This document shows positions 16,246 to 54,464 of a DNA stretch of 54,665 bases, in pieces. Source of the DNA: Phyllobates terribilis (lineage: Eukaryota); contig NW_027367813.1 in assembly GCF_046119375.1 (NCBI RefSeq), forward strand, positions 1 through 54,665. Direction: 5' to 3'. The first letter of the stretch is position 1. Each line of letters begins with the position of its first letter. The notes beneath the pieces were generated by a model. That model was not told the origin of the DNA, ran no database searches, and saw nothing but the letters and a program-made list of their open reading frames with translations. Position numbers and translations under genes: made by a program.

Positions 16246-16267
16246 TGTCGTATTGGAATGGGATCCT

Positions 16268-16279
16268 GCTCTGATATCA
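16268..16279 (-). promoter_or_regulatory. Primer binding site (tRNA-iMet type), element B
   Basis: Minus strand TGATATCAGAGC, one mismatch to TGGTATCAGAGC, 2 nt from the 5' LTR. Confidence 0.85.
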
Positions 16280-16281
16280 AT

Positions 16282-17077
16282 TGTGGATTGTGAAGATCTT
16301 AGTCTAACTAAAGATTGAACTTTTGTGTGGAAATACAAGACTAAGAACAAACAAACAATTTAATTCCAAAACGTTGGTGATTTGATTTCTTGTGAGACTT
16401 ACAACTACTAGGCGAACACACAGTTCTTAGTTTCTCTAAACTCTCCTAGCTATTGCCTAAGCTCTAAATCAAGATGAAGTCTTTCTCTCTATTTCAACAA
16501 ACCCCCGATTTAAATATAAATGAACTAAGTTGTTTATACTGTGGCATAATCACCGGGAACTAATTACCTACAAGCAAGTAAATAATAATAAATAAACTAC
16601 TAAATCTAAACTAGCCGAATATAATGACAAACTAGCTTCAACTGTTAAGATCTCGAATCTGGTAAATCTGTGGCGAATCAAGTCTTTCCTTCTTTAGCTC
16701 TTTGGAAGATTTATTTCCATATATACGCGCTCGGTCCCCTTGAGTGTCTTCAGTCCCCTTGAGCGCGTCCTCCTTGTATAGCGTGTTACTTGTGCAGCTC
16801 GATCCTTCACTCTTATTGTTCGGTCCCCTCCAGCATCACTCGTTTCCCTTGCTCCTAGTTAAGCGCCTTGAGCACTATTCTTCTCGCTGGAATCACTATT
16901 GTACCCCACTTCAGCTCGTTGTTTTCCACGCTTAAACCTCCTAAATAACTCAAAGGCCTATCGATTTCCTACGATATCTCACTCAATACACATATTAGTT
17001 CATAAGGCAGTTTGTTATCATTAAAACTAAGGCATTATCAGTTACAAGAACTAAGGGGCTAGTTCATATAACTAACA
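16282..17077 (-). repeat. 5' LTR of element B
   Basis: tgtggattgtg...ataactaaca, ~796 bp, follows the PBS and precedes the TSD. Confidence 0.93.
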
Positions 17078-17082
17078 ATAAT

Positions 17083-18452
17083 GTTACACTTGCTCTAAAT
17101 CCAACACACAAAAGCTAGTAAGCTAGTGTACAAGGACCATATTCAACAAGCGAGTATATATAAGAATGAATCGTTGTTGAACACTTAATAGAGTATCTTT
17201 GATCGACGAGCTTTATAGAAGAGTAGCTCGATAGACTAGTTTAAGTGTTTTTAAGATGCGGAAATCGAAAAACACAGAAAGCGGGTTTAAGTCCCTTTGT
17301 AAACACAACAAGCGAGTAGCTAGTGTGTTTATTTGTAGAGGTTAGAGACTTAGCCACAATAATAACTTTAGATTGTTAGATTTAAAGTTCAGCTCAATAT
17401 GCACAGAGATTTGGTAAGGTGAGAACCCTTGGCTTAACTCAAGCCCAGGATGAAACTCACCACTACATTGATTATATCAAATGAAGATTACAGAAACTCG
17501 CACTCTCCACTCAATACAATCACGTTCAACTCAAATACAAGTCTGCTACTCTCAAGGTATTGTTGACTCACTTGATCCCTCTGAGATCACTAGCTTTTCA
17601 CCCTAAACACTCAATCGTACTCACCTCCAAGCTTTCTAGTCCTGTTGTGATCTTCCCTGACCACTCAACTATACTAACTCCCAGGGTTTCAGATCCTGTT
17701 GTGTTTTTCTCTTGAGATAGCTTCTCCTAAGCTCACTAGGTTGTTTCTCACTCAATGAGCTTCTCAAGCTTGTGCATTAACAAATACCTATCGCACCTAT
17801 ATATAGAACTTCCTAACTTATTCCCCAAGAAAGAAATTATATTACACATTGCAACAAAGCTCAATCTGTGTGTCGGTCCACCAAGGAGCACCATAAATTC
17901 CACATGCTTCCACTTTTGTTGAGAAACAAACTTGTAACAAACTTGTCCATGCTGGCAATCCATCCCACACCACTCGCAAGCCTTTAATTCGTCCAGCTTG
18001 GCGATCCTCGTCCATCTCTATCCATCGGTAAAAACACATTCTTCCCCGTCCTTAGCTTCTTGACATTCCCATTAGCTGCACATGAATACCCTACACGATG
18101 GTGCATGGATTCCACCTGGGACCTCGCTTGTTTCACTTGTGTTGAAGCAAAGGATTCACTAGCTCGCAGCGACTCTCCATGCACTACGCTAGTCCTTCGC
18201 CTTCAACGCACTTCACTCTACTTCACTTCAGATTTGATTTAGTTTCTTCAGTTTTGGTTGAGATTGCCTTTGCTATATTCTCTATCTTTGCAAGGCTCAA
18301 AGCTAGTCTCTAGCTTGTTCGCTTGGTCAAAGCGACTCTCTTGGATTCTTAAGCTATTCCTGTAATGCTTAGAAAATACAAGATATATCAAATGTAGTGT
18401 TTATCATTATCAAAACAAAAGAGCGATTAGTCTGAGCAAGCTCAAACTAACA
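17083..18452 (-). repeat. 3' LTR of element A (main part, after the B insertion)
   Basis: Continues seamlessly from 7236-7297 when compared with the intact copy (ctagatatgataat|gttacac at ~22041-22061); followed by PPT atttccccccttttg. Confidence 0.9.
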
Positions 18453-19784
18453 ATTTCCCCCCTTTTGATGATGACAAACACCTAAACAGTGTAAGCACGT
18501 CTATTTCAAAACGTACTCAGTTAAGGTATAAGATATAAAATGAATCTTAAACTGGTAGTAGACAGATTGACCAAATCTGCTCAAAATCATGCTAAAGGCA
18601 CTTAGCAAGTGTACCTTTATTCCCCCTTAGATCAAGCTGGTCTAAATTCTGCCCAATTTCGACAACGAAAAGATTATTCTACCTCAATCCTTCATCTGCC
18701 CAAACCGTTTTTCTTCCCACTTTTGGCATCATCAAAAAGGCATATATATTTCATCAAAGGGAACTAAAAGTAAGGTACACAGTCACACTTAACTCAGATA
18801 ACAAGCATAATCTTGTAAAGATCATGTAAGCGAGACAGTAACCATGAAGCATTCAAGTCGCTATAATCAATCTGAGGCATACAATGAATATGTATAAAAA
18901 TCTCATGATTTTTGTAGATGGAACCCTAGCGAGTCTATAACATAGTCACACAAAGAGAATTCAGAAAGAAAGTAGGAGTATCAACTCAAATCGCCTTCTT
19001 CTCATAATGTTCACCAACTTTTACCAATAGACTTGATTTCTTCTTGGAGTGTCTTCGCTTGTCTCAGTGCCAAAGGATAAAGAGTGGATTGGAACTGGTC
19101 TCGAGCTAATATACTTAAAGCGAGACTGGACAAGATATCGATGTAGTGTGTAGACTTCATATTTTACCTCGCTTGATTAGCACTTTAGTTAGATAGTTGT
19201 GCTGGGTTTCGAGGTGGTCATTCTTCACTCGCTTTGAACAATTGGCGCTTAGTTACTTATACTGGAAGAAGTTTGATCATGCTTGAGATGTGATACAATC
19301 GCTTAGCATGAACTTCAAAGCGTAATAATGAGGGGATATAATGAACATATAAGGGGGGGTCACTCACACTCAAATATAGCATGTAATAAGCATGTGCATA
19401 TATGGGATACTGGCTTTTTGTCACAATAATGTATACTTTCTATGTGGAGTTATATCAAGGGAATCAGGAAGCAAACATTAAAGTCAGGCTTAGAGACACT
19501 TAGAAGTGGATCATTTCTTAGGCATGTAATAGGCAAGAAGACGATCACCACTTTCATGAGAGGTAAAGAAGAGCATGCAATGATACAGAAGATAGCATGT
19601 TTGCATCAATATACTCATCAATCTAGTCATTTCTTGTTTAGATATAGCAAGTTAACAAGAAAAGATCATGAAAGCTTACCTCATCCTAAGTTCCCAAAGA
19701 TAAAATAAATTGCTTAAACATAGCCAGTAGAAAGGAACTTACAGTGAGTGGATGAATGGTCTAGTTGATAGGAATTAAGCCCAA

Positions 19785-19960
19785 CTAAAGCCTTAGATTT
19801 AATAAAGGTACCCAATTTAGTGCTTTAGTAAAGATGTCAGCGATTTGACTCTCTGTTGGTATATGAGTAAGCTTCACCTTCTTATGCTCAACGTGGTCTC
19901 GTAGAATATGATGGAGAACATCTATGTGCTTGGAGTGAGAGTGATAAATCGGATTTTCTT
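19785..19960 (-). pseudogene. pol: RNase H C-terminal remnant of element A
   Basis: NPIYHSHSKHIDVLHHILRDHVEHKKVKLTHIPTESQIADIFTKAL, the only clearly recognisable pol piece in A. Confidence 0.8.
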
Positions 19961-20423
19961 GTTCTTCTAATATGGGGAACTTACAGTGCATCACTTGTTC
20001 TTCTAATATGGTAAGAATGAAAACCGAATAGGCTAAAGGCTTATAAAGATATCCAAGTAAAGTGCCTTTAGTGAGATTAATTGAAGCTTTGGCTCTTCTG
20101 GAAGTATTAGTCATAGTTCAACGAGTTAAGTAATAGAGTCGCTTGAATCTTCAAAGACTCGCTTGAACTATCTGAGTCTCGCTTTGAGCAAATAGATATA
20201 GCTTTATGACCAAGTGAGACTCGCTATGCCAAAGGCTAATACTTTACCACATAATATAAATCTCATGTATGATAAGAGTGAGAGAGATGTTGAATAGAAC
20301 ACGCTTGATTATGTCAATTTAGCACTGAAGGAGATAGCAAAACTCCTTTGCTTAATAAGGATGAGAGTAGCTTTTAGATAATCCATTTGCCTTATACTTT
20401 ACACCCTTTCCTGCAAAATCAAA

Positions 20424-21928
20424 TCAAGCAGTGTGTTCCCAACAAAGTATTGACTTCGTAGGAACGTTAGAGCTAGCGATTCCATAACTGGAAGGTAGAA
20501 CTTTCATCTTCATAGTTCTAGGAACTCGCTCTAAATAGTCATCATCACAAAGACATGGCACAAGATGAGGTTTACCTATGAGAGGTAACACTCGATGTGC
20601 TCCTACTTGTTTGTATTTGGCTTGTAAGGGCTTCGTATATACAGATACAGTCTTAGATGACTCGCTCGAAGCAAGCTTGTCTATCTCAAGACTTGCTTGA
20701 ATGAGCGTATCCTCAGATATACTCATAACTGACTTAGAGGAAATAGAATCACTCAAATCAAGCTTGTCCTCAGATTGAATCGCTTGATTGAGTACACTCA
20801 TAGATATGGAAAGAGGGGGTGTAAGGAAGATGTCAAGTATAGGTTTTGGTTCAAGAACACTTACCTCAACTTCAGGTATAGGGGTTGGCACTGGAATAGG
20901 TTGAGCGACTATGAAGCAATTCTCAGGATCTTCACCATCGTCGGCTTCATCAACAGAATCGCCCCATAGAGTGACAAAGGCCTTCCTAGGAGGTGTTCCA
21001 GATCCACCTTCTTCTTCATTTGGTCTACCTTTTCACTTGGACAATCTCTAGAAAGATGTCCTCTACTTGAGCATTTGTAGCATGTAATGTTATTGAAGTT
21101 GAATGGCTTGTTGTCCTTTGGATCTCTGTCCTTGGTGGTGATGCCAAACTTCTTCTTGAATAACCTCTTGACCAGCTTAGTCATCATCACTACTTCCTGG
21201 TCTTCTTCATTTTCGGACTCATCATTATCCTTGACCTTTTGAAGTACGCGAGTGAGCTTGAGAGTGAATCATTGGATTTCTCTTGATGCTATTGACTCCT
21301 TTTGATCTTCAGCTTCCTGCACTCTTAATTTATTAGCAAGTACATATACAGGCAAACCTTTCGTTTCTTTGGTCATTAGCATTATTTGTTTAGTTGTGTC
21401 GAACTTAGACTTAACACCATGGATAAAAGCGAGGACGAGTTCCCATGATTCTACCTTGAGTCATGCGGAGGAAATCTTGTCACATAATACCTGGAATCTG
21501 GAATGGTAATCTGAGATAGACTCGATTTCTCCCATTTTAAACGAATGAAAGTCCCTTTGGAGCTCGAATCGATGGTTGTTCTTCATATCCTCATTGTCGC
21601 TGTGCATATATATGATAGCATTCCACATGAGCTTGGCAGTGGATAGAGACATGATTTTGTCGACGTCCTTGCGTGAGAGAGCATTGAGGATGAGTTACTT
21701 CGCCTTGGCATTCTTCTCTAGCGTAGCATACTCAATTCCCCATTTGTATGTGTTGGTTTCTTCTTTGAGAGTTTCTTCACCTTTTTCACTAATTCTCCAA
21801 CATTGATAGTCAGTTTGTTGGATATAGTTATTAGTCGTCATGAGACACTATTCTAGGTCACCCTCAGCTAATATATGGGGCTTAGCCAAAGAGATCCCTA
21901 GGTTAAAAGAATTTTTTTCGTTGCCCAT
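20424..21928 (-). pseudogene. gag: gag of element A, disrupted
   Basis: MGNEKNSFNLGISLAKP..., AKLMWNAI...FKMGEIESISDYHSRF, knuckle CYKCSSRGHLSRDC, ending LCWEHTA*; several stops. Confidence 0.85.
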
Positions 21929-21993: not shown

Positions 21994-23441
21994 TGTGGGT
22001 TTATAGACAAGTGAGGACCGAGTATGATAAAGCGAGTGAACTAGATATGATAATGTTACACCTACTCAAAATCCAATGCACAAAAGCTAGTAAGCTAGTG
22101 TACAAGGACTGTATTCAACAAGCGAGTATATATAAGAATGAATCGATGTGAACACTTAATAGAGTAGCTTTGGTCGACTGGCTCTTTATAGAAGAGTAGC
22201 TCGATAGACTAGCTTAAGTGTTTTTAAGATGTGGAAATGAAAAAACACAGAAAGCAAGTCTAAGTCTCCTTGTAAACACAACAAGCGAGTAGCTAATGTG
22301 TTTATATGTAGAGGTTAGAGACTTAGCCACAATAGGAAATTTAGATTGTTAGATTTAAAGTTCAGCTCAATATGCACAAAGATTTGGTAGGTGAGAACCC
22401 TTGGCTTAGTTCAAGCCCGGAATGAAACTCACCACTATATTGATTATATCAAATGAAGATTATAGAAACTCGCACTCTCCACTCAATACAATCACGTTCA
22501 GCTCAAATACAAGTCTGCTACTCTCAAGGTATTATTGACTCACTTGATCCCTCTGAGATCACTAGCTTTTCACCCTAAACACTCAATCGTACTCACCTCT
22601 CAGCTTTCTAGTCCTGTTGTGATCTTCCCTAACCACTCAACTATACTAACTCCCAGGATTTCATATCCTGTTGTGTTTCTCTCTTGAGCTAGCTTCTCCT
22701 AAGGTCACTAGGTTGTTTCTCACTCTATGAGGTTCTCAAGCTCGTGCATTAGCAAATACCTATCGCACCTATATATAGAACTTCCTAACTTGTTCCACAA
22801 GAAAGGAATTCTATTACACATTGCAACAAAGCTCCACGCTGGCAATCAGTGCATTGGTCCACCAAGGAGCACTACAAATTCCACACGCTTCCACTTTTCT
22901 TAAGCAACAAATTTGTAACAAACTTGTCCATGCTGGAAATCCATCCCACACCACTCTCAAGCCTTTTATTCGTCCAGCCTGGTGATCCTCTTCCCTCTCT
23001 ATCCATGGTAAGAAACACATTCTTCCCCATCCTTAGCTTCTCGACATTCCCATTAGTTGCGCCCGAATACCCTACTCGATGGTGCATGATTCCAACTGGG
23101 GCCTCACTTGTTTCACTTGTTGAAGCAAAGGATTCACTAGCCCACATCGACTCTCCATGCGCTATGCTAGTCCTTTGCCTTCAACGCACTTCACTCTACT
23201 TCACTCTACTTCACTTTAGAGTTGATTTAGTTTCTTCAGTTTTGGTTGAGACTGCCTTTGCTATATTCTCTATCTTCACAAGGATCAAATCTAGTCTCTA
23301 GCTTGTTCACTTAGTCAAAGCAACTCTCTTGGATTCTTAAGCTGTTCTTGTAATGCTTAGAAAGCACAAGATAGATCAAATGTACTGTTTATCATCATCA
23401 AAACAAAAGGAGCGATTAGTTTGAGCAAGCTCAAACTAACA
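21994..23441 (-). repeat. 5' LTR of element A
   Basis: tgtgggtttatagac...ctcaaactaaca, 1448 bp; palindromic cctatatatag TATA at ~22768. Confidence 0.9.
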
Positions 23442-38451: not shown

Positions 38452-38904
38452 TAACTATAAATTGGAGTTGTACATACTCCGTACTTCATATTGGGGAAGG
38501 AGCTGAGTGGGATGCGGGACTGGAGGAAAGATTCCGAGCTGTTGGCTCTCATCCGTTTGGATGCTCTAGTGCGACTATAGTCGATATCTATGTAGTCCCC
38601 TAATATTTTCCTTTATAAAAAAAAATATTGGGGAAGGAGCGAACGTGAATCTCCCGACAATATCCACAGCCTTGGAAATTTCTTCGCTTGGAAATTATTG
38701 TACCACAGCCTAGACGTATATACATAGATTTCTTCGCTTGGAAATTTCGTCAAAGCCACAGCCTCAAGCAGACACAGCGTAGACTCACAAGTCTTCGCCC
38801 GAGTGAAATCACCGAATTTCAAGTATACCATCTTATTCCATTTGCATTTTTTTCACTTGTGGTTTATGACTTCTGTCCCACCCTTAAATTCAGTGCTTAT
38901 ACTA

Positions 38905-39163
38905 TTCCCTCCGTTCCATAATGCTCTTCCCATTTCTTTTCGATTCACTTGTCGAGACACGTTTTATGTCTTAAATATCTCTCGGTATATGTTATTAAAA
39001 ATCGTAAAATTTATATACAGTTAAAGTATTCGTCGAGACGAATAAAACAAGATCACACATGACTATGTTTTTTCATACACATTAAGAGAAATCAAGAAGA
39101 TTCTCCATAAATATGAATAGTGATTAAAAATAAAATGGGAAGATGATATTGGGACGGAGGGAG
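38905..39163. mobile_element. Stowaway MITE
   Basis: TA|ttccctccgttcc ... gggacggagggag|TA, 259 bp. Confidence 0.85.
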
Positions 39164-39178
39164 TATTATGTTTTACTA

Positions 39179-39416
39179 CTCCCTTCCTTCCATGTTCATT
39201 CTTGTTTTGACCCTATTAATGATCGAAGTTTATTCTTGCTAATGTATAAGAAAAGAACATAGTCATGTAAGATCTTGTTTGATTCGTCTTGATAAGCACT
39301 TTAATGATATAAATTTTTATAATTTATACTAACACATAATAATAGATATTAACGATACAAAACTTGTATCAGCAAGTGTGTAAAAATAAATGAGAACTAT
39401 ATTACGAGACATAGAG
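39179..39416. mobile_element. Stowaway MITE related to 38905-39163, in opposite orientation
   Basis: TA|ctcccttccttcc ... gagacatagag|TA; internal aacatagtcatgtaagatcttgtttgattcgtc is the reverse complement of the neighbour's gacgaataaaacaagatcacacatgactatgtt. Confidence 0.65.
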
Positions 39417-39763: not shown

Positions 39764-42459
39764 TTAGGCTCCTGAGTGCGAAAGTGGTGTTGTCACAAAC
39801 TGCCCATTTACATACTCGTGCACATATTGTTGAGGTAGAGAATGCTCCCCCTGCAGTTATATTCCAACCACTAATCTTAATAAAGATCATACAAAACCAA
39901 TTTGTTAAGAATAGATATATGAATGTATACCCAGTCTCCTTCTTCACTAGAGACCAGCACATTGATCTCACTGGATTTAGCAGTTGTAATTGATGCTCCC
40001 AGTGATTCTTTACTCAGATACAACTGGCATCCAGAAGTATTATCCACTGAAATTGTTGGTGCTGAACCCTATAGTGAACAGTTCTATTAGTTGGATTTCA
40101 TCATTTTAGATTCATAAACATCAAATCCTCTTTTGACACTTCCTACCTGGGATTGAACCTCGACACTGTTGCAGTTAACAACCTCAAAAGCAGCCACAAC
40201 ATCCTGCTTTCAAATATCAATCATTAAATACCATTTCAAAAATTGTGCTGTCAATTATACAAGAAAACTTGCCTGAAATACAATACCCATCTTGCTGCAT
40301 TTATCAAGAGTGATATTATTAACCTTCCCTGCCATAAGCAAAATTAAAGGAGTTCGATGAGTACATGGAGAAAAGTATACAGTATTCAAAAATGAGGTCT
40401 TAAGAAAAGACAAACCTTGGACTTGCAAGACAGAGTCTTTACATCCATAAACATAAACTGACTGTTTAGAATCACACTCACTTATAACCAAATCCTTCTT
40501 TCCAATATGATTTTCAACTACCCACCTGTCGAAACCATACAAGAAATTTATAAATGCTCTGTTTTAGGTTTATTAAATTTTAACGAATAATTAATTACTC
40601 ACTTGCGACCCATCTGAAGCTCCAGCTTTGGTGGGCCCGTCTTAGAGAATGCAGCTGTACTCTTGCGTGGTTCCTTTTCACCTGCGCTGACAACACCACT
40701 GCGGTCCGTACGATTCTTTGTTTTCATATCAGCTGTAACCTTTCTCAAACCTAACACATAACATACGGTTCCATTAATTATCATAATTTCAGCATATTGT
40801 TATTAGTATAAATTGAGTTTTAATCAGACCCATACAGAAAAACCAAGGACAGGTAGCTACCTGAAGTAACACCGCCGGAATTTATTTCCTGGAAAACAGC
40901 AGACATCCCAACTTTTGGAGCTGAAGATGAAGGCTTAGATGAGTCAGAGGTTAAAAGAGATGACCGTGGTGGTGGTGGTGGAGCAGGGCCAGCTGGCGGT
41001 GATGGTTTAGAAGGAGCTGAAATTACGGCTTTGCCAGAAGTGGACCAAACAGGCCCTAAGGGATAGAAACTTTTAACATAGTCCCTCAGGCCTGGAAGAT
41101 AAAGCTCCTTCACAGCTTTGGCCCACTCCACATGGTTTGGATCCTTATTTCTGTACTCCACTAGAACCTGTGTATGTGAATAGAATCCTAATAAAGGTGT
41201 TTGGATACTGAATAGAAGAAAAAATAGTTTGTACGAGCATGAAGCTTACCTTGTTGTTATAAAATTCAGCCATCTGCCAACAATCTTCTACATGGGCAAT
41301 GGGGAGGCTCATACCTTTGGTTACAAGATGGGTATATATGAGATAAACGAATGAGAATAACTTTTGAAATGGACAAAAATGAAGTCGGTCAATGCTTACT
41401 TACCGCAATCCTTCCCTGTATATGCAATCCATGCTAAAGCTGAAAGACTTTCGGCAATAGTTTTCTGATGGTTGAAGAAATCAGATCGCCTACCCTCAGT
41501 CAATGCCACACCTTTGCATATCACTTCGTTCAAAGGCTTCAGAAACTCAACTAACCCTTGCATATCAGGCTTCTGCAAGATTTAAACCCAATTCCAAGTA
41601 AACTGCTGTGGTATAAAACCCTATCATCAGCTAATCTATCAAGCATCATAGTTTAGAAATACAAGCAAATTTGGTAGTTACGGGTTCAATGACACGTAAT
41701 ATGAACTTTTTGAACTTACGATTTGATACAGGAAGATCTAATTAAAATGTTTCATCAGTAACTTATTTAAATGGAGTTCTTCAGCTACTGCAATTACCGC
41801 TTGTACCTTGATCTCACATATTGAAACGTGTCTCTCATTAATCTGAGATTGTCCCTTGAATCATTAATAAACTAGAGCTTTTATCACAAATCCATCACCG
41901 AAAATTGTATATTTGCAGAAGTTCCTATCCAAAACAAGGATAAGTAAAGCAACACAATCTCAATCCCATTAGGAAATTTCAAACTTTCCTTTCTTCTGTC
42001 ACTGTAATCTTCAAACGCAAAGCATTTTTCCCAAAACTAGAACAAAATTCAAATCAGTCCTGGTCCTCTTCATATAATCTTCCATTTACCAACAACGAAC
42101 ACACAGATCTCCTGACTATGAGCATAATTAAGTAGTCTAGAAAAGGAGCAATGTGCAGAAGCAAAATAAAAACTGACCTGAGATTGCTTGACCTTGATAA
42201 GAAGCTCCTTAAGAGCAGCAAACGCCGCTTCAAGGATCTTCGTAGCCTCAAGCACCTTATCGCCAATGCTCTCGGCAGCGGAGGAAACCCTAGCGAGAGA
42301 AGTCGCCATCAGATCGCTGAATGCCACAATCGCCGGATCTGATTCGAAATCCACGGCGTCATCCGCCGCGAAATCTCGCGAACCGACTCCGCCAGCGGCG
42401 GATAAGGACTCCAGCCGCGAAACCGCCCTCTCCAATCTCTCAATCAGCTTCTCATCCAT
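39764..42459 (-). CDS. CAP1: Adenylyl cyclase-associated protein (CAP/Srv2 family actin regulator), 10 exons, 472 aa
   Basis: Exons 42178-42459, 41404-41572, 41250-41314, 40861-41167, 40603-40750, 40416-40525, 40273-40328, 40147-40203, 39931-40068, 39764-39850. MDEKLIERLERAVSRLE (RLE motif), polyproline, WH2-like MSAVFQEI...LRKV, C-terminal TAKSSEINV...SHSGA*; 1419 nt in frame. Confidence 0.96.
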
Positions 42460-44176
42460 TGCTCAATCAGCGTCAATAGCCTTGAGCAGATCTGATATGG
42501 AAAGGAATTTAAGAGAATGACTTGAACAGAGAACACTGATATGATTCGTTGTCTCCTCTCTCTTCACGTTCGAACACCAAAAATTGGGAATTTCGGGTTT
42601 TTAATCTCTCTGTTTTTCAGGCGAAAAGATGGACACGTGGCGGGTGAAAAGGGATAGAGTGTTGGTGGTGGTGGAGTCCCATATTTATGTGTGTTCGTGG
42701 ACAAAAACAACATCTTGATGATATGTAATGGTAATATGTGGTTAGTCAGTTCATGGTTATTTCTTGTAATAACTAATACTGTAATGTTCATGTTTTGTAA
42801 GGACCGAGAATATAGATCTGCGTAATAGTATATGATCTATGAATATATATTTTTAACGTGTATAAGTTTTTTTTTCAAGAATCTTAATATGTTTTATTTA
42901 GTTTTAATTTTATTATAGATAGATTATATATGTAAATTTTTTATACGTAATGTATCACATTTTAAATGTTAACTTTTTTAAAGTTAGAGTTCACTAATGT
43001 TAAATTATGTACGAAATCAGCTATTTAGAATCTAAATTTACAATATAATATATGCGAGAATTGTATGATCATAGGTCAGAGACTCTATAGCTAGTGATTG
43101 AGACTTGATTTAATACATATTCATAAGATAACGATGGTAACAATTTATTAATCTCTTATACACGAGCAAGACAATTGTGTACGAAGACTTTGGGAGAAGA
43201 ACATAGAAAAAAATGTAAGTTCACTGATCTATAATAGGTTAGCGTATTGCTGTGACATAATTTGAGAGAGTAAGGATCATATGAGTACCATGTTTAAGGT
43301 GAGTAGGTGAGTAGTCATCTCAGCCGTTCAGATTGTTCAGTCCAACGACCAGGACGCACTCCTTCTTCCTACTATAGTTTAATGATGGAGGGTATTTTGG
43401 ACTTTTCATCCTTTATGTCTTCTTCCGATTGAACAACCTGAATCTCTGTTTGGCGAATTTGAGGCGATTTGTCGAGATCTCCTTCTACTTCCTTCGATCT
43501 CTCCCTATCGCGCATTTATCGGTGCTTCTCATCGATTTCTGAATCTTTGTTCTTTGCGTTTTCATCTGATTTTGGTGTTGTATGGCATCAGGTACCTGTT
43601 CTTCACCGAATTTCATTTATGCCCCCAATTTCTAGGTTTTTTGTTCCCGCGGCACTTTACATCGCTTTTTATGTGGTTGTTTAGCCTCACTATCTCTCCC
43701 GATTGTGATTTTCTCTGTGTTTGGAACATTCTTGCTCTGTGTTTTCGTATTTCATTAATTGAGAACGGATTTCTTCATTTTTTGGGATTTTTCTTGTATT
43801 TTAGTCGATGCTTGTGCATGTTTGTTTTTTGATGCGTTTTATTGCTGTTTTGTTTTGGTGTTTTTATTCTCAGTTTTTGGTGTTTTTGACGTTTTTTGTT
43901 GTGTGTTTGTTTTTGATGTTTTCTTCTTGCTGTTGCTGTTTGTTCCTGTGAGAAACTGTTCTCAGTTTTATGAACCGTACCTTTTTTAAATCATGTTTGC
44001 ACTAATATCCGATCCGCCTTTGTGTAATTTTTTCACTTTCTCTATTTATCATTTTTATAATATCTGCAACCCATGTGTACTTTTTTCAAAGATAGTGTAT
44101 TTTTATTGCCGAAACTTATCATGTGTGCTCTCACTTTTTTTCCTATAATATAAATCATCAATTATATTGCATCAAG

Positions 44177-44294
44177 CATGAAACTCGATGTTATAAACCA
44201 TGAACCTTAATCTTATAAAGCATGAACCTCAATGTAATAAACCATGAACCTCAACAATATAAATCATGAACCATCAGAATAAATCCTATGAACA
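44177..44294 (+). repeat. 22-bp tandem array 1 (CATGAACC core)
   Basis: Cores at 44177, 44199, 44221, 44243, 44265, 44287 (exact 22-bp period). Confidence 0.9.
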
Positions 44295-45252
44295 TCATGC
44301 ATCATATTTCATCAAGCTGGAAAACGTTGTTTTCAACCTGAATCTTAAGTTGGAATACATCATCATCATCAATTCCATTCGAAAGGCATTGTCAATTTTA
44401 ATATCAACCTGTTTGAAAGAAGACTATATCAAAACAAATATTTTTGCGTTTTCTGGTCACTCTTGGCTAGCAGGTGCTGGTTTTTTCTTTATGATATCCA
44501 ATGCTTGTTCAATCATCAAATTTGTTGGAGAAGTTATGATCCTGTGTGTGTATTTGACCTTCATACTTTTACACACTTCTACTTGTTCTTTTCTGACATT
44601 TGGTCTTAGGTACACCCATGTACACTTCCAGATGTCTCATTGCATATATTCCTGACGAGTACTCTTTAGCAACACTGGATTTGCAAGGAAGATTGACTAG
44701 CACTGAAGTTGATGCAGATTCTTCCATCATGTCCGCTTTCTTATGAAGGCGAACAATTCTCAGTTGTTTACCAAATATAGAGGCCTAAAAGACACAATAA
44801 ACAAACAACACACTATTTTTCAGTTTCTATTCAACTTGATAAACTACAAAGTTTTTTTTTCAAATTTAAGTTTTATGCTTACCAATTTTTGCACTATTGG
44901 CAAGTAGAATTTCATCCCTCTGTCTTCTTTTGCACTGTCCAGTATTTGTGACTTTTGATGTTCCAAATTGAGAACAACAACAAAATACTGTTGATCAACT
45001 TCTACTGGGACCATGATCTATAAACATTTTCATCATAGTTAAAGTTTAAACTATCACAAACACAACAAATATGAAAGTTATATGTCTAACTGGAAGGACG
45101 TACCATGTCTATGTCTTTTAATTTCCGTCCGTGCACTTGACTCAAAGCATAATTGATATTGTTTCTAACTTTGAGTTCTTCATCTTTTAGTCTCATACTC
45201 TGCATTATTGAACAATTGAAGTTTATTTTCCACTCATTTTACTACACATAAT

Positions 45253-45365
45253 CATGAACTTTATATTGTAAACTCATGAACCTTGAAATTATGCACCTTT
45301 TTGTCGCATAGATCATGAACCTTGCTATACATAATAATGAATCTTATATTTGAAACATATGAACC
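45253..45365 (+). repeat. 22-bp array 2 (CATGAACC core), intronic
   Basis: Cores at 45253, 45275, 45314, 45336, 45358, inside intron ~45242-45434. Confidence 0.8.
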
Positions 45366-46604
45366 TTATGCTTTTTTAAACATATAACATTTTTTATGTT
45401 TTTTCATGTGCAATAAGGATAATTTTTTACTTACCTAAATCTTCACATACAAGATTAGTCTGTTTGGATGTTCTGGGCTTCGTAATTCCTCGTTTTTGTT
45501 TAGAAGCGTGGTAAATGCATCCATGCATTTGAAGTGCACCTTTATCTCCATACTTGCAAATTCGATTGATTTGACATCTCGTCGCAGATCCTTGTATAAG
45601 GGTTGCTCACTGTTTCATTTTTAGTAAAATAATTATTATGCATTTAGTCATTCGCTCGTTGCTTGTATTTAACTTACGATTTTTTTCTAGACACAAACAC
45701 TTACTCAGTTATAGTTCTTGCACAACAATATCTGTAAACAGCTTTATGTTGCTCAGTTTGCCTTGATAAGATGTCAATGGTTCTCTGTTTGTACGGGCTT
45801 CTGAGATTACGCGACAGACGATTGTGTTTAATACGGTTTTTCTGGCTCAACCATTACAACTTTCCCCCTTGCTTTTGCTTTATCCTGTTGCATTTGTAAT
45901 CAGTGGGTTTTTTTGGCAGGTTATCTAAATGGTTGTATAATTGATAGTTTAGTATTTACCTTTAATCTCCTCCTTAAATCCTCCTCATCTTCTTCAATTT
46001 GTCTGGCCAATGCTTCTTGTGCATCCTCCTTCTCTTCAACGTCAATGATTTTTTGTATAGTATCTTCCTGCTCTTCAGAACTTATTAAGTGGAATGCTGG
46101 TGGTGAGATATCTATATTTGTCTTTCTAACATTCACCCCCACATGGCCTGTTCTCGGTTATTGTTGAGCTCCATCTTTTCCAACAACCTTTTCATTTATC
46201 TTTACACATTTACTCCCTATTGCTTCTGTTCCAATATCACTTATGTTTGCCCAGAACATGTCATCATTTTGTTCGACAACTTTGGGTGAGACTGTAGCAG
46301 CTGGATTTTTAACTGTCTTTTCTTTTGTATTCTCCTCAATCTCGCGTAGACAGTTAATGAGTTGTGGATCAGACCAGAACGGATGGTTTTCATCATTCCA
46401 CACACTCATAAAATCTTGCTTACTTTTCTCCTCATCTTCTATTTTCCTCATCATTATCTTTGTTGTATTCACAGCAGTTTTCACCCTTTCTTATGTATCG
46501 AACTCGTTTGGCATAGTCTTCATCATTTCTTCCACCTCGATGATTGCTTTCCCCAGCATTCTAGTTTTGCTAGTAAAATCAAGCAGCCATTTCTACATAA
46601 AAAC

Positions 46605-46677
46605 CATGAACCTCATGTTATAAACTATGAACCTCAATGTTATAAACCATAAGCCCTAAAAATAAATAATATGAACA
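46605..46677 (+). repeat. 22-bp array 3 (CATGAACC core), intronic
   Basis: Cores at 46605, 46626, 46648, 46670, inside intron 46593-46809. Confidence 0.8.
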
Positions 46678-48240
46678 TCATGCATTATTTTCAACATCAA
46701 CCTGGAAATACATCACAATTTTAACATCAACTTATTTTCAAAATCACAACTCAACATCATCAATTTCATTCAAAATGCATCCCAATATTCAAAATGCATC
46801 AACTTATACCTGTATTGCCCCTGCAGCTGGTGTTTCTGTGCTTTCATAGTTCATTGTTTCATGTTCTTCATTAATCCTGGCCTTTTCATGGTGTAATTGA
46901 AGCTTTCCTCTACCAAAACCACCAAACTTGATCTCATTATCCTCTCTTACATACAAATTCTTGTCTGTCCAGCTCAAAAATACAGGTGTTGAGTGCGGGT
47001 TTTCTTTGCCCATTATTGTCACTCTATCAACATACACTAAATGTACATAAAGCAGGTATACATAGTTGTTAAACTATGAAAATTATTATACTTAATGGTA
47101 AATATTTATAAAATTAAATAAATAAAGTTACCCCTTACCACAAGAAAGATGATAGGACCTTTGTAAAACCTATCCTTTTTAGCTTTCCAGTCGAGAGATG
47201 TTTGTGGCAATGAGTTCAATACAAACTCACACCAATTCTTGTTTCTGACATTCTCAACATCTGTAGTTAGCAAGCTCTTGTTGACAGTCCCTTTCTGATT
47301 CGATTCTATCAATCCTGTGATGAAGAGATTTATGAATAACCTCTTAAACCAAGTTTCATCCTTACAAACGATCAACCTCTCAGCAATGTGCGATGGTCTT
47401 GTACCGTCTATTTTATTGGCTGGTTTTGAGCTTGAGGTTGGCTGCGTTTTCTCATCTATTTTGAAGAAATTAAACCACTCATCCAAAACAGCATGTTGTT
47501 CTGCATTTGTCCTCTCTCTTGGGATCATTTGTTCTCCTCTTGGTATCCCAAGAACCCTTTCCGCATCTTTCTCATTTGCATCTATACAGCCTCCATCTCT
47601 CATTCTTATTGCGCATCTCACCTCATCATAATTATCCAATATCCAATACGCCATTGCATTCAGGACTTTAATGAATTTCAGATTTAAAAGATCTCCAAAA
47701 CCCATTTCTCTCACCCAGTTTTTCTGCTCTTCACTTAGGGCAGACATTGTCTCAACAAACATCTTGGGAATGTTTCGGGTAAGCAATTTTGGAAATCCAT
47801 CCACATCAATTTCCACTTTCACGGCTTTCCTTTTACCCCCCAGTTCAATCTGATCTTTCTGTTGCCTCTTGCCAAGCACTTTTACAATTGGTTCCTTCTT
47901 TCCTTTCCCTTTATCCCGAACCTCTAAGTTTAAATTTTCAGAGTCCATGGCCATCTGTTGCTTCTCCTTGGGTTGTGGACAAACTTTGCTACCTACGTGA
48001 ATCATATAATAATAAATATGTCAATTTAAAAACATAAGTTATATCTTTCAATAGTTTTTTGAAGTTGCATTTTTTTCTGTCTCTACAATGAACCTCATAG
48101 TAGATAGGTGTGATACAGTCTGTCAATTTCATGAACCTTAATATTTTTTTGTCACCCACTTTCTTTTCGTAACTGAAAATTTGAACTCTATTTAACTTTA
48201 ATCTTTATTAAATACATAAATGAATTCTGGAGTTCAATCT

Positions 48241-48402
48241 CATGTCCCGTTCTTTCAATGTCATGTTCCAGCATATACGTTTCCATGAACCTTACTGTTT
48301 TATTGTCATGTTCCTGTTCTTTTAATGTCATGTTCCAGCATATACGTTTTCATGTTCCAGCATATAAATTTTCATGTTCCAGTACATATATTTTCATGAA
48401 CC
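48241..48402 (+). repeat. 22-bp array 4 (mixed CATGTTCC/CATGAACC cores), intronic
   Basis: Cores at 48241, 48262, 48284, 48307, 48329, 48351, 48373, 48395, inside intron 47993-48469; extra cores near 48088 and 48130. Confidence 0.88.
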
Positions 48403-50640
48403 TTAAATTTGAGGATCATACAAATTTCATGTAGTTTTAAACTAAACAATCTAAACATTTTTTGCTTACTTGTAGCAACAGATCGTGGCAGCATTTCTTC
48501 CTTCTTTTTGTCTTTCTCTTTATGTTCTTTTTGCTCCTCCCCTTTTTTGTTGCTGATTTTCGTCTTCTTCCATTGGTTGTCCTTGTGTTGTCTTTATCAC
48601 AACACTTCTCTCTTTCATTTTGGGTCCTTTTTCTGCCAATCTCTTTCCATACGGCTTTAAGCCCTTCTTTCGTGCAACACATTTTACTCTCCCTAAGTAT
48701 GTAAGCTGATGTTTGTGGTTTTCTGCAGGCTCATGCATGTTTTGCGGTGATGAAATCTCATCTTAAAGAGCTTTGTAGCTTTGCATGCTCAGCTCAACTA
48801 GTTGTTATTGTTGCTCAGGCTCAGGCTCAAAATGTTATTGTTGTATAACCTCTTCACCTCCACTAGCGTTATCAATATCTCCTTCATCTGTAGCACTTCC
48901 TAACACAATTTGATCAACGGTTAAAGCAGCGCTGGAGTTTGAACTAGATGTTGAAGATGATATTGAACCAGACGAGGAAGATGTCCCAATTCTTATAACT
49001 TCAACTTCCATTCTAGGACCTTCAATCACATAAACAGTAGAAAATTACATCAAACTCTAAATTTTCCAAGTTGAAATGCTAATAAGGTTTATAGAATCTC
49101 AAAGTACGGAACATTTATCATATTTTGAATGAATAGATCTCAGTTTTGTTCATGCAGATTTTCAGTTCAAGCAAATCCAAATTATAGAACATTTTAACTC
49201 AAAAAAAACAGAACAGTCGACTAAAATCAGTTCGAAATCTCGCATCAACTATAATCTCTAGTGTGAAACCCTAAAACTAACTAAAAAAAGGTCGAAATCT
49301 CAAATTGGGAGAAAATCGAAAATTAGGTTTTTCAGCTCAGGATTGTTTTTACCAACGCCATGAGAATCGCTTTGTGTTCCTGACATTTGTGTGATTTTTG
49401 TTGATGCAATAGTCGGGGAATCGGGGTTGATTTTTGAGGATTTCGCTTCGATCGCTTTTCTTCTTCTGCAAGTCGCAATTTGTGTTACTGAGAGTGGAGA
49501 AGACGAGAAGACGCGAAGCAGGTACATAATTCCACGGGGGCAGTGTTGTCTTTCCATTCGGTTTTCCAGGTATTTACAAAATTAACCTTCTTTTTACTAC
49601 CCAGACACGCGCGTCGCTTTTTTCATCTTTGCTTTTTTTTATTTTTTTTTCCCAATTTTCTTGGGCCGTTGATCATCCTGATCCAACGGTCCAGATTCGT
49701 ACTCACCTACTCACTATAACACTTATACTCACAAGAACCTCCCTCTAGTTTGAGAATGCCATATTTCACTTAATTATTTACATATATTGTTTATTATCTT
49801 TAGGCAATAACCTACTATTGAATAAGAATCTGAGCTTAATTCTTTTTTAAAGAGAGGTTTTTCGTAAATTCATATCTCAATGGATTCTTCAAACTTTATA
49901 CAAGAATAAATATAAAACAAATATTCTTCAAACTTAATTTCTAAGATAAAAAGGGTGAAGGATGTGTAAAGAAATTAATAGTAAGTGAAGTATGAGTTAA
50001 TCTAATATACTATAAAACTTGAGTTGTATGTCCACTAATTATCTCCAAATCAATCACCACATTTTCGATTTTATCCTTACTCGCTGACAAGTTAATTACC
50101 ATAATCGCCCCTAACAAGTTAATTATATATTTTTGACCAAAATATTTTATTGTACCAATAAATCTCTTATTGAATTATCCATCCTCTTTGTATTCTCCAC
50201 TCTTATAAAATTAAATTCCACACAAATTATCATATGTTCTAAACCTATCTAATATATATTTTATTATAATCTTTATAAAATAAAGTTTATAACCGTTAAA
50301 CATCTCTAAAAATATATCTCTAATATATAAAATGTATGTACAAAATCTATCTCTCTATTGTCATATTATCTTTCCCCCTTTTTTCCTTTCATTTAAAAAT
50401 GGATGGGATAAAATCAATAAATGTCTCCATAATTTTCATTTGATTTTTTCTAATAATAATAACGTATCTATCATCTTCATAATAACAATAATATAATAAT
50501 AATGATAATAATCATAGTAATACTTATGAAGTTAAGTTTTTTGAAAAATTAATTTCTTCCAAACTCGACTTGGTGCCAATCTATCTAATATCTAATCTAG
50601 TTTAAGTTGATTAACAATTATTTTTTCTTCTTTTTTGTTC

Positions 50641-50848
50641 AACCTTTGAATATAGATGCAGTTAAAAGTTTCTCGGAGGTTACAAAACCTTTGATCTACC
50701 ATAGATAAACGATACATATATTGGGCATAAATATGCTATAAAATCAATCTTTGAATACGGATGCAATTAAATGCTTCTTGGAGTTTACAAAACATTTCAT
50801 CTACCATAGATGGACGTTATGCATATTAGGCTTAAATATGCTATCAAA
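50641..50848 (+). repeat. Two ~105-bp tandem copies
   Basis: aacctttgaatatagatgca...tctaccatagat...aaatatgctat repeated from 50746. Confidence 0.8.
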
Positions 50849-52243: not shown

Positions 52244-52451
52244 GGCCCCATCGGAGATAGTAGAGCGGTAAGTGAGGAGTAGATCTCCGAGGTGTGCAAT
52301 ATTCCACCGTGGGTTCGAAACTCATAAGCTGCATAAATTGCGTTGTTTCCTGATTTACCCATGTTAAGGAGTGATGTGCTAGTTGAATTAGCGTGGGGAT
52401 TAGTGGGCTCACTAGTAGCGGCCCGACACCCTCGATAGCCCCGATAAAAAA
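52244..52451 (+). mobile_element. tRNA-derived SINE, full length
   Basis: Box A-like gatagtagagcggt, box B-like gggttcgaaactc, 3' ggggattagtgggc...ggcccgacacc, oligo-A tail, 11-bp TSD aactcaatacg (52233-52243, 52452-52462). Confidence 0.85.
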
Positions 52452-53059
52452 AACTCAATACGACAAATATTATTAGGGATAAACGCATATCATATGAAAT
52501 AGGATTCACTTAATACAAGAAATACAAAATATACCAGAGCACGGGTAAGTATAACCTAGTACATTTAAGTTTTAGGGAGGCATCTTAATACATATAAAGA
52601 TTAGGGGGACTTTGAAATCTTAAATGTAAATTTGCAATTTCATTACTCCTCCATTGAAGACCCATTTTCACCCATTTTTAATTTCCCTTACCTTTGAATA
52701 TAGCCTTGGCATCATTAATATCCTCCTTATTGTTTGGCATCATTAACCTCTAGAATTCCTATTACTCGGTCCAATTTGGTTAGCCCAATAGCCCAACCCC
52801 TCCTCCTTAGCCTATAAATAGAGACATTCTTCATTGTGCAAGAATATCTCCCTCTCTTCCTCTCTTCATCTCTCTTCCTCTCTCTTTAGAAGTATGCTCT
52901 GTAGTTGCCCACATACGGGATCCTCTACATCAGAAACTTGATTTTCTTCTTAGATCTAAATCGATTTGAGAAGTATGCCCTCAAACTCAACTTGGGTTTT
53001 GTTTAATTTTCCCCAGTTGCCCTTATTTTCTTTAATCATCTTTTTGGAAATAAGTGTGA

Positions 53060-54050
53060 AAGAAAAACTAAAATCTCTCACATAAAATGAAAATTGCATT
53101 AGCCTTCCACTCAATTAGGAAAGATAAATTCCTTCCGATTCGGAGCTCGAAATTGGCATTTTCGTTTTATCGATAAATTGAAGAAGGCCTTGGCTGTGGA
53201 GCTGAGTGAACTCTCTTGTCCAACATTGTTTTTTTTACGCCTGTGGAGCTTAGCTTCTTTTTAGTCAAATTAAGTAAATTAAGCTTCACGTCCCTTTGAA
53301 TTCCAAGAGTCCACATAATTCACTTCATCCTTTATTACTATTAAATAAAAATCATTTTTTATTCTGAAACCGCATTGAACCTTTGCTCTTTCTATAAACT
53401 AAAATCTCTTACATAAAATGAAAATTGCATTAGCCTTCTACTCAATTAGGAAAGATAAATAGTCAAATTAAGTAAATTAAGCTTCACGTCCATTTGAATC
53501 CAAGAGTCTACGTAATTCACTTCTTATTCTGAAACCGCATTGAACCTTTGCTTTTTCTATATTCCGACCCTTCTTTGCACAAGTCAAAGCATCACCTCCA
53601 TTGCTCTATAAATAAATAAATGAACACCCACATACAGTTCTATAAGAGAGCCCATCACCATGAATCTATACATCATATCATAATCCTTATAAAGTTGGGT
53701 TTTTGTAAGCATATTTCTCAACATGCCCTTATTTCCATTATTGATCATTTTTGAAGTAAATGCGAAAGAAAAAAAAGAAGAAAAACTCTCAAATAAAATA
53801 GAAGTTGTATTAACCCTCTACCTGATTATGGAAGATAAATAGTCAAATTAATTAAATTTAACTTCACGTCTCTGTGAATTCCAAAACTCCGCGTAATTCA
53901 TTTCATATCCTTTAGTACAATTAAATATTCTCATTCTCAAAACCGCCTTAAACCTTTTTCTTTTTATGTTTCGACCCTTCTTTGCAGAAGTCAAAGCATA
54001 ACCTCTATCACTCTATAAATATAGAAATGAATGCACGTATGCAGTCCCAT
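53060..54050 (+). repeat. Locally triplicated, shuffled modules
   Basis: tagtcaaatta..ttcacgtc...taattca at ~53262, ~53460, ~53840; aaaatctc..acataaaatgaaaattgcattagcc at ~53070 and ~53401; cgacccttctttgca...ctctataaat at ~53564 and ~53972. Confidence 0.8.
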
Positions 54051-54253
54051 AAAGTTGATAGATTACACAAAATGAAAAACACATAAAAAATGACAAATAT
54101 ATATGAAAAATGAAAAAACTAAATTTATTATATTAGGATATGATTAGGATCAGAACTAGAATTAGGAAGGATTAGGATAGTGTACTACCGAAAAGATATC
54201 AAATTCAAGTAATACACATTTATCTGACACATTTTGTACTCATTAATGTATTA

Positions 54254-54464
54254 TTTTTTTGTCGAGAGTAGTGTTGAGAGTGTCGGACCGCTACTAGCGA
54301 GTCCACTAATCCCCCGGCTAAGACAACTAGCCCATCACTCATTAGCATGGTTAAATTAGGAAACAACGCAATATACGCAACTCACGAGTTCCGAATCCGC
54401 GATGGAATATTACACACTTTGGAAATGTACTTCTCATTTACCACTCTGCTATCACCACAGGGTT
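54254..54464 (-). mobile_element. tRNA-derived SINE, same family as 52244-52451
   Basis: Reverse complement aligns along the whole first copy (gatagcagagtggt, ggattcggaactc, ggggattagtggactcgctagtagcggtccgacact, oligo-A); imperfect TSD attaat(g/a)tat. Confidence 0.8.

What the first reader, a model, noticed from the sequence alone, without database searches (positions are those of the whole stretch)
44177..48402. MULE with four phased 22-bp CATGAACC arrays in the non-coding parts of its own DUF1985/Ulp1-like gene: candidate VANC-like anti-silencing system
Seen: about 23 copies of a CATGAACC-type core, mostly with a 22-bp period (about two helical turns), form four same-orientation arrays. Three lie in introns of the element's only gene and one just 3' of its stop codon. 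I noticed no such arrays outside the TIRs. Array 4 mixes in a variant core, CATGTTCC, which suggests motif turnover. Established: Arabidopsis VANDAL MULEs encode VANC proteins (DUF1985/DUF287-type) that bind short motifs amplified as tandem repeats in non-coding parts of the element and locally remove silencing marks. Inference: this may be an analogous self-recognition system in another plant lineage, with the DUF1985-like protein as trans factor and the arrays as its binding sites. This copy's gene is broken, so any activity would come from intact relatives.
Basis: partly seen in the sequence, partly recalled or inferred. Interest (0 to 1): 0.8.

Follow-up and report, generated by a model that had tools for sequence, protein, structure and literature searches.

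The report
Dead Mutator transposon with VANC-like motif arrays
A broken, transposase-less plant Mutator-like transposon carries a gene whose DNA-binding-type domain folds like the known anti-silencing protein VANC21, and its non-coding DNA holds phased arrays of one short motif, so it is most likely a further member of the known VANC-type transposon counter-silencing systems rather than a new kind.

Summary
All 10 exact CATGAACC sites in the 54.7-kb window lie on the + strand inside 44199-48402. With 5 CATGTTCC and about 7 one-mismatch copies they form four arrays, mostly spaced 22 bp, all outside exons.

The arrays sit in a 6,478-bp Mutator-like element (43268-49745) with degenerate TIRs, a 9/10-matching 10-bp TSD and no transposase.

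Its only recognisable gene runs on the minus strand and is broken. The N-terminal domain has no Pfam hit, but its model (pLDDT 91) matches VANC21 bound to DNA as the only significant PDB hit (Z 11.8). It also matches MAIL1, MAIL2 and MAIN. The C-terminal Ulp1-like domain lacks the catalytic Cys.

Contigs from four species labels show a high-copy family with array-unit gain and loss.

The closest sampled relative (L007) is a MULE with a convergent transposase gene. It carries the same core, AGGTTCA, 38 times (35 in gene sense; about 2 expected) without any DNA similarity. Four more distant relatives carry other motifs.

Most likely this is a non-autonomous member of a VANC/KIU-type anti-silencing family. 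Binding and demethylation are untested. The scan noted a similar element with another motif elsewhere in this genome.

The parts
43258..43267 (.). Left target-site duplication, TAATTTGAGA
   Evidence: Matches 49746-49755 at 9 of 10 bases.
43268..43340 (+). Left degenerate terminal inverted repeat; contains GTGAGTAGGTGAGTA
   Evidence: Inverted repeat I3, about 71% complementary. The 15-mer occurs only twice in the window, once at each end in inverse orientation.
44177..44297 (+). Array 1: 22-bp units with the CATGAACC core, 3' of the gene's stop codon
   Evidence: TRF period 22, 4.4-4.9 copies; exact cores at 44199, 44221, 44243 and 44265. This bin has the highest contig depth in runs X1 and X2.
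44460..44784 (-). Last exon of the Ulp1-like domain. The Cys box reads SSGIYAMRHLE, so the catalytic Cys is absent. The reading frame changes near 44605.
   Evidence: tblastn against relatives that read FDCGIYVMRHMETY; frames; other copies carry 13 extra bases after 44605.
44847..45238 (-). Two small Ulp1-like exons (44847-45017 and 45089-45238)
   Evidence: Frame translation; the 45089-45238 exon matches L007 DNA.
45253..45365 (+). Array 2: five cores spaced 22, 39, 22 and 22 bp, in an intron
   Evidence: contigs from other copies show unit gain here ('goes back 43').
45438..45614 (-). Ulp1-like exon
   Evidence: Matches L007 at 35% identity, E 7e-9.
45924..46592 (-). Variable middle exon with two in-frame TAA codons (46491-46493 and 46158-46160)
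   Evidence: Every laid contig in all four runs reads G at 46493, giving CAA, so that stop is private to this copy. This exon matches only L007 DNA, E 5e-10.
46601..46650 (+). Array 3: 21-22-bp units in an intron, next to the splice acceptor. With its flank it forms a roughly 230-bp duplicate of array 1.
   Evidence: TRF; alignment to the array 1 region at 76% identity.
46810..47052 (-). Conserved exon (YVDRV...GGFGRG)
   Evidence: tblastn against five relatives, 31-41% identity.
47136..48005 (-). Large exon encoding the PMD/DUF1985-fold domain
   Evidence: 1034 homologues. AF2 model pLDDT 91.2. Matches VANC21-DNA 9lnj_A at Z 11.8 and MAIL1 at TM 0.69. No Pfam hit.
48087..48402 (+). Array 4: mixed CATGAACC and CATGTTCC cores, 22-bp period, directly 5' of the PMD exon
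   Evidence: Contigs in three runs skip 66 bp (three units) here.
48403..49672 (-). 5' region of the element: Lys-rich and Ser-rich ORFs without family matches; possible upstream exons or promoter
   Evidence: No Pfam hits. Contig depth matches the rest of the element up to 49000, where the laid stretch ends.
49673..49745 (-). Right degenerate terminal inverted repeat
49746..49755 (.). Right target-site duplication, TAGTTTGAGA

Best explanation
The element at 43268-49745 is a dead, non-autonomous copy of a high-copy Mutator-like family. Its one gene encodes an N-terminal PMD/DUF1985-fold domain and a C-terminal Ulp1-like domain that has lost its catalytic Cys.

The inferred mechanism runs by analogy with VANC21 and with the Ulp1-carrying VANC genes (KIU). 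Protein made from intact family members would bind the AGGTTCATG core, read in gene sense. That core is arrayed at 22-bp spacing, about two helical turns, in the non-coding parts of every family copy. High-density binding would locally counteract silencing, either DNA methylation or possibly Polycomb marks as for the PMD-C proteins. That would keep the family transcribable and mobile in the presence of a transposase-bearing partner.

Shown here: element structure, fold, array anatomy, family copy number, array turnover, and the shared core in the closest relative.

Inferred: protein-motif binding and any effect on silencing.
For: Element. TIRs and a 9/10 TSD are present. No transposase remnant is found.

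Fold.
- MAIL1, MAIL2, MAIN and the PP7 long-form homolog match at E 1e-6 to 2e-4.
- AFDB clusters named DUF1985, Ulp1 and PMD match at TM 0.7-0.8.

Arrays.
- All 15 exact + strand cores (10 CATGAACC, 5 CATGTTCC) lie in non-coding DNA, although exons make up 40% of the element.
- One core is shared by arrays with three different spacers.

Family. At >=85% identity, 2292, 1838, 1051 and 426 contigs from four species labels lay on the element. Joints in these contigs skip or repeat about 22, 44 or 66 bp inside the arrays.

Closest relative, L007.
- It has a convergent FAR1-MULE-SWIM transposase gene.
- It has 38 AGGTTCA sites, 35 in gene sense, against 2.1 expected and a maximum of 8 in shuffles.
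- It has no blastn similarity to this element.
- It is the only relative that matches the fast-evolving middle exon.

Distant relatives. Four carry other strand-specific motifs in non-coding DNA, 9-14 copies against 0.2-0.5 expected. Control 6.5-kb tiles reach at most 4-7 copies of their commonest 8-mer.

Literature.
- VANC motifs are arrayed in one orientation as tandem repeats in introns (PMC5735166).
- KIU-type VANC genes act in the same way (PMC13317346).
Against: - There are no binding, methylation or expression data. No RNA run holds the PMD exon.
- Pfam DUF1985 and PMD models do not hit this protein. No DUF287 was found.
- The domain is structurally closer to the host PMD-C proteins than to VANC21.
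- Arrays 1 and 3 are copies of one module, and tandem units are not independent events.
- The motifs in the relatives were picked after the fact as the commonest k-mers.
- Co-variation of motif and protein rests on one close pair and four distant loci. A fifth distant locus, L006, showed no clear motif.
Confidence: 0.55

Rival explanations
1. The arrays are neutral minisatellites. Slippage and segmental duplication in AT-rich introns of a decaying transposon produced them, and they bind nothing in particular.
For: - Arrays 1 and 3 plus their flank are one duplicated 230-bp module.
- Units within an array are near-identical, which points to recent duplication.
- This copy is dead.
- No RNA run holds the exon.
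Against: - The same core sits in arrays with three unrelated spacers.
- The arrays persist, with turnover, in copies from four species labels.
- L007 keeps the same core in the same orientation relative to the gene, 35 of 38 on one strand across several separate clusters, without detectable DNA similarity.
Confidence: 0.2
2. The arrays are real cis sites, but for another factor: either the family's transposase (FAR1/WRKY-GCM1-type DNA-binding domain, as co-encoded in L007) or a host transcription factor. The PMD-like protein would not be the binder.
For: - L007 and L005 encode a MULE transposase next to the PMD-Ulp1-like gene, and motif copies extend into the transposase region.
- From general knowledge, some transposons carry arrays of binding sites for their own proteins near their ends, for example En/Spm TnpA.
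Against: - The arrays are internal (introns and the 3' flank of the gene), 0.9-1.3 kb from the TIRs, not at the element tips.
- The only solved structure with this fold is a sequence-specific DNA complex.
- The non-autonomous element kept the PMD-like gene and the arrays together while losing the transposase.
Confidence: 0.15
3. The same protein-motif module exists, but it opposes Polycomb (H3K27me3) silencing, as proposed for the PMD-C proteins MAIL1, MAIN and MAIL2, rather than DNA methylation as VANC21 does.
For: - The domain is structurally closer to MAIL1 and MAIL2 (TM 0.69 and 0.64) than to VANC21 (TMq 0.53).
Against: There is no chromatin data for this genome. The Ulp1-carrying architecture is that of KIU/VANC genes, for which loss of DNA methylation is reported (PMC13317346).
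Confidence: 0.1

Closest known systems
VANC21 / VANC6 of Arabidopsis VANDAL21 and VANDAL6 (Fu 2013; Hosaka 2017, PMC5735166; structures 9LNJ/9LNK)
   Same: - Encoded by a Mutator-like element.
- The DNA-binding-type domain has the same fold (Z 11.8).
- A short motif without CpG is arrayed in one orientation as tandem repeats in introns and other non-coding parts.
- A variant motif type occurs within the family (AA-type and TT-type here; C-type and T-type there).
- Repeat units are gained and lost between copies.
   Different: - There is no Pfam DUF1985 or DUF287 hit.
- Identity to VANC21 is only 11-14% in the structural alignments.
- A Ulp1-like C-terminus is present.
- This element still has recognisable, if degenerate, TIRs and lacks the transposase and a VANB-type gene.
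- The motif is different.
- No functional data exist.
Kaonashi (KI-MULE / KIU) Ulp1-carrying VANC genes (Hoen 2006; Sasaki 2022, as summarised in PMC13317346), and the Ulp1-carrying MULEs of melon, rice and grapevine
   Same: A MULE-borne gene combines a VANC-type N-terminal region with a transduplicated Ulp1-like domain. [quoted passage not shown]
   Different: This family's N-terminal domain scores nearer to PMD than to DUF1985 in Pfam (9 versus 3 of 50 relatives, all below threshold). The catalytic Cys is lost here and in 8 of 20 relatives. I could not read Sasaki 2022, so I could not compare motifs or periodicity with it.
PMD-C proteins MAIN, MAIL1 and MAIL2 (PMC5418596; preprint 10.1101/2024.09.27.615353)
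   Same: These are the best Swiss-Prot structural matches (E 1e-6, TM 0.6-0.7). They associate with specific DNA motifs and oppose silencing.
   Different: They are single-copy host genes acting at promoters through single motifs, with no Ulp1 domain. Here the gene is transposon-borne and the motifs are arrayed inside the element itself.

Membership tests
VANC-type anti-silencing system | Gene carried by a Mutator-like element | tested here: met
   TIRs and a 9/10 10-bp TSD. Relatives L005 and L007 sit next to MULE transposase genes.
VANC-type anti-silencing system | DUF1985 domain by sequence (Pfam PF09331) | tested here: not met
   No hit at E<=1 for this protein. Only 3 of 50 relatives hit, best E 0.028. 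The profile gives no sequence match to VANC21 in the PDB.
VANC-type anti-silencing system | VANC21 DNA-binding fold | tested here: met
   9lnj_A: Foldseek E 8.3e-4, probability 1.00. VIA-align Z 11.8, 200 residues aligned, rmsd 3.8 A, the only chain with Z>=2.
VANC-type anti-silencing system | DUF287 domain | tested here: not met
   Absent from the Pfam results for all exon pieces and for the 50 relatives. As I recall from Sasaki 2022, this domain is gained and lost among VANC genes.
VANC-type anti-silencing system | [quoted passage not shown] | tested here: met
VANC-type anti-silencing system | Motif specific to the family and changing with the protein subfamily | tested here: inconclusive
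   No exact copies outside the element in 48 kb. The closest relative, L007, shares the core. Four distant relatives have other motifs. There is no genome-wide census, and only a few loci were sampled.
VANC-type anti-silencing system | The protein binds the motif and causes local loss of silencing marks | not testable with these tools
   Needs EMSA or DAP-seq, and bisulfite or ChIP after expression of an intact copy.
KI-MULE / KIU (Ulp1-carrying VANC) | Ulp1 (Peptidase_C48)-like C-terminal domain | tested here: inconclusive
   This copy's pieces have no Pfam hit. 10 of 50 relatives hit Peptidase_C48, best E 1.7e-7. The Cys box aligns, but Cys is replaced by Ser.
PMD-C (MAIN/MAIL) domain family | PMD by sequence (PF10536) and by fold | tested here: inconclusive
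   Fold met: MAIL1 E 1.2e-6, TM 0.69. Sequence: no hit for this protein; 9 of 50 relatives hit below the gathering score, best E 5.6e-4.

The most novel reading that the evidence does not exclude
MULE-borne PMD-like/Ulp1-like genes form a large family (over 1000 homologues at 50% clustering). Across this family they may generally travel with their own strand-specific, roughly 22-bp-phased motif arrays. A protein-motif pair (AGGTTCA) would then persist after all other DNA similarity is lost. That would make these genes a broad class of self-recognition modules sitting between host PMD-C proteins and Arabidopsis VANC, possibly acting against Polycomb as well as DNA methylation.
Probability: 0.3. 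Interest if true: 0.6.

Novelty: new member of a known kind. Interest (0 to 1): 0.45.

Why it matters
If the inference holds, this family would give a candidate protein-motif pair for VANC-type anti-silencing outside the Arabidopsis VANDAL families where that system has been tested. Its DNA-binding-type domain sits structurally between the host chromatin regulators MAIN/MAIL and VANC21. The shared AGGTTCA core in two elements with no remaining DNA similarity offers a concrete pair for binding tests. It also bears on the open question of whether transposon-encoded PMD proteins oppose silencing. For this particular copy the practical meaning is small: it is a dead, non-autonomous element about 800 bp upstream of a CAP gene.

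Tried and rejected
- Pfam on all exon pieces gave no DUF1985, PMD or Peptidase_C48 hit.
- The word-indexed homologue search with the 299-aa ORF returned nothing.
- A profile of 76 domain sequences against PDB sequences gave no VANC21 match. Only fold comparison linked them.
- I tried to read Sasaki 2022 (EMBO J) by DOI and by PMC id, and searched the library for the paper on the VANC21 structure. Neither is held or turned up.
- I looked for a second Ulp1-like gene beside the TCATGAAACCT array in L002. None is recognisable.
- I ranked relatives by identity in the N-terminal half of the domain to place L007. That region is too conserved to discriminate. The variable middle exon and the Ulp1-like exons were used instead.
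- The information content of the core is partly circular, because units were anchored on a core pattern. I do not use it as evidence.
- L006 showed no clear motif.
- P0087 has no locus on record.
Full report
**Observation.** CATGAACC occurs exactly 10 times in the 54,665-bp window. All 10 are on the + strand, between 44199 and 48402. Dinucleotide shuffles give a mean of 1.76 and never more than 6. The variant CATGTTCC occurs 5 times on the + strand, all at 48262-48373; the window's one other copy is on the opposite strand, outside the element. Adding one-mismatch cores gives about 22 units.

Tandem Repeats Finder reports 22-bp arrays at 44177-44297 and 48328-48398 and a 21-22-bp array at 46601-46650. 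The array at 45253-45365 is irregular, with spacings of 22, 39, 22 and 22 bp. The one addition is that the gene lies on the minus strand, so in gene sense the core reads AGGTTCATG.

**The element.**
- An imperfect inverted repeat links 43267-43328 and 49685-49746.
- The 15-mer GTGAGTAGGTGAGTA occurs only twice in the window, once at each end, inverted.
- Reading the ends gives TIRs starting at 43268 and ending at 49745. They are flanked by TAATTTGAGA and TAGTTTGAGA, a 10-bp target duplication matching at 9 of 10 bases.
- The element is 6,478 bp long.
- It holds no transposase remnant. Its other ORFs have no family match.

**The gene.** Minus-strand translation and tblastn with five relatives give these exons:
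- a large exon at 47136-48005;
- a conserved exon at 46810-47052;
- a variable exon at 45924-46592;
- four small exons down to 44460.

Arrays 2 and 3 lie in introns, and array 1 lies 3' of the stop. Array 4 lies immediately 5' of the large exon. Whether that position is an intron or the leader cannot be settled without transcripts.

The copy is broken in at least three places:
- an in-frame TAA at 46491-46493;
- an in-frame TAA at 46158-46160;
- a change of reading frame in the last exon near 44605, where other copies carry 13 more bases.

All laid contigs in all four runs read G at 46493, which gives a Gln codon. That stop is therefore private to this copy.

**What the protein is.** The 299-aa ORF has no Pfam hit even at E<=1, but it has 1034 homologues in the 50%-clustered library, the best at 34% identity over the full domain. 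Among 50 long relatives, Peptidase_C48 is hit in 10 (best E 1.7e-7), PMD in 9 (best 5.6e-4) and DUF1985 in 3 (best 0.028).

An AlphaFold2 model built on 76 aligned domains has mean pLDDT 91.2.
- On re-alignment this match gives Z 11.8, 200 residues and rmsd 3.8 A. It is the only one of 507 chains with Z>=2.
- Against Swiss-Prot models the matches are MAIL1 (E 1.2e-6, TM 0.69), MAIL2, MAIN and the PP7 long-form homolog.
- Among AFDB clusters the best matches (TM 0.7-0.8) are plant proteins named Ulp1 protease family, DUF1985 domain-containing, or plant mobile domain.

The domain therefore belongs to the PMD/DUF1985 superfold and is somewhat nearer to PMD-C than to VANC21. This agrees with published statements that VANC is structurally homologous to MAIN/MAIL1 (PMC13547354; preprint 10.1101/2024.09.27.615353).

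The C-terminal Cys box aligns with that of relatives, which read FDCGIYVMRHMETY. Here it reads SSGIYAMRHLE. Of 20 relatives with a recognisable box, 12 keep Asp-Cys and 8 have lost the Cys. Protease activity is therefore unlikely to be the conserved function of this domain.

**Family behaviour.** I laid Logan contigs from four runs, each with a different species label, on 43100-49000 at >=85% identity. This placed 2292, 1838, 1051 and 426 contigs, with identities spread from above 99% to below 90%. The element is therefore high-copy.
- The bin holding array 1 has the highest summed depth in two of the runs.
- Contigs show joints that skip or repeat 43-66 bp inside the arrays. One example is a 66-bp skip in array 4, seen in three runs.
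- Loose ends carry further CATGAACC units in other contexts.

The arrays are thus a family feature with unit gain and loss, as described for VANDAL21 (PMC5735166). No RNA run holds the PMD exon. Arrays 1 and 3, with about 150 bp of flank, are 76% identical, which makes them one duplicated module.

**Relatives.** I fetched genomic loci for seven relatives.

L007 is the only locus whose DNA matches the fast-evolving middle exon (E 5e-10) and two small Ulp1-like exons of this gene. None of the 150 representative proteins matches that middle exon.
- L007 has a convergent transposase gene with FAR1, MULE and SWIM domains.
- It has 38 AGGTTCA sites, 35 on the gene-sense strand. Shuffles give 2.08 +/- 1.59 and at most 8.
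- The sites form clusters upstream of the gene, in introns, 3' of the stop and in the transposase region.
- blastn finds no similarity between L007 and the window element.

In the window, 12 of the 20 AGGTTCA sites lie in the element, all in gene sense.

Four more distant relatives each carry a different strand-biased motif in non-coding DNA:

| Locus | Motif | Copies | Expected |
|---|---|---|---|
| L002 | ATGTTAGCA | 9 | 0.20 |
| L004 | TTAATTGCT (partly at 22-bp spacing) | 12 | 0.53 |
| L005 | TGCTTAAAT (locus also has a MULE transposase gene) | 14 | 0.51 |
| L003 | TAATGTGCA | 9 | 0.25 |

L006 shows nothing clear. In control 6.5-kb tiles of the window and in locus flanks, the commonest 8-mer mostly reaches 4-5 copies and at most 7 in the window tiles, against 12 in the element. 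Three locus flanks reach 8: the right flanks of L002 and L005, which hold motif arrays, and the left flank of L006.

Caveats: these motifs were chosen after the fact, many copies arise from longer tandem units, and L003 is an internal duplication.

**Interpretation.** The anatomy matches the published VANC logic point by point: a MULE-borne protein with the VANC21 fold, and a short motif arrayed in one orientation in non-coding DNA. There is also a variant motif type, repeat turnover between copies, and a family-specific motif that the closest relative keeps while everything else has diverged.

A review reports that Ulp1-carrying VANC genes (KIU) likewise recognise family-specific motifs and cause hypomethylation, and that the Ulp1 capture is old and conserved in eudicots (PMC13317346, citing Sasaki 2022, which I could not read). 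I therefore read this as a dead, non-autonomous member of a VANC/KIU-type anti-silencing family, with confidence 0.55 for the functional part. The structural description is near certain.

The rival readings are:
- neutral minisatellites (0.2);
- binding sites for the transposase or a host factor (0.15);
- a Polycomb-directed rather than methylation-directed variant (0.1).

**Novelty.** This is a new member of a known kind. That motif is absent from this element in that orientation; its reverse complement occurs once. This fits family-specific motifs. It also means the scan has already seen this kind of system on other DNA.

Noticed in passing
window 42070-42459 (-): The first exon of a cyclase-associated protein (CAP) gene (Pfam CAP_N-CM, E 2.3e-7) starts about 800 bp from the MULE's left TIR. 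The element therefore sits in that gene's upstream region.
   Followed up: partly
window 7295-17079: A Ty1/copia retrotransposon lies on the minus strand, with an RVT_2 hit at 11341-12024 and a gag-pre-integrase hit at 13589-14080. Direct repeats 93-95% identical lie about 8985 bp apart (7295-8093 and 16279-17079) and are likely its LTRs.
   Followed up: partly
window 1-2405 / 18201-20553 and 17078-18421 / 22050-23409: Further long direct repeats, 85-95% identical, are spaced about 18.07 kb and about 4.97 kb apart. This suggests nested or tandem LTR-type elements.
   Followed up: no
window 38899-39318: Two short inverted-repeat pairs have arms containing CTCCCTCCGT-like ends. As I recall, these resemble Stowaway-type MITE termini.
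   Followed up: no
window 52253-54456: A 181-nt inverted repeat, 82% complementary, has arms 1.8 kb apart. A 105-bp tandem duplication lies at 50639-50848.
   Followed up: no
L002 15950-16440: In another genome there is an array of TCATGAAACCT / CGTGAAACCT cores, one base longer than this element's core. It lies 4.4 kb beyond the annotated PMD-Ulp1-like gene, which itself uses a different motif. No coding partner is recognisable in the 1.1 kb available.
   Followed up: partly
L008 12310-12704 and 16479-16741: Dense arrays of a CpG-rich core, GAGTCGCGA, spaced about 20-22 bp, lie downstream of another PMD-Ulp1-like gene. Unlike the AT-rich motifs of the other loci, this one contains CpG.
   Followed up: no
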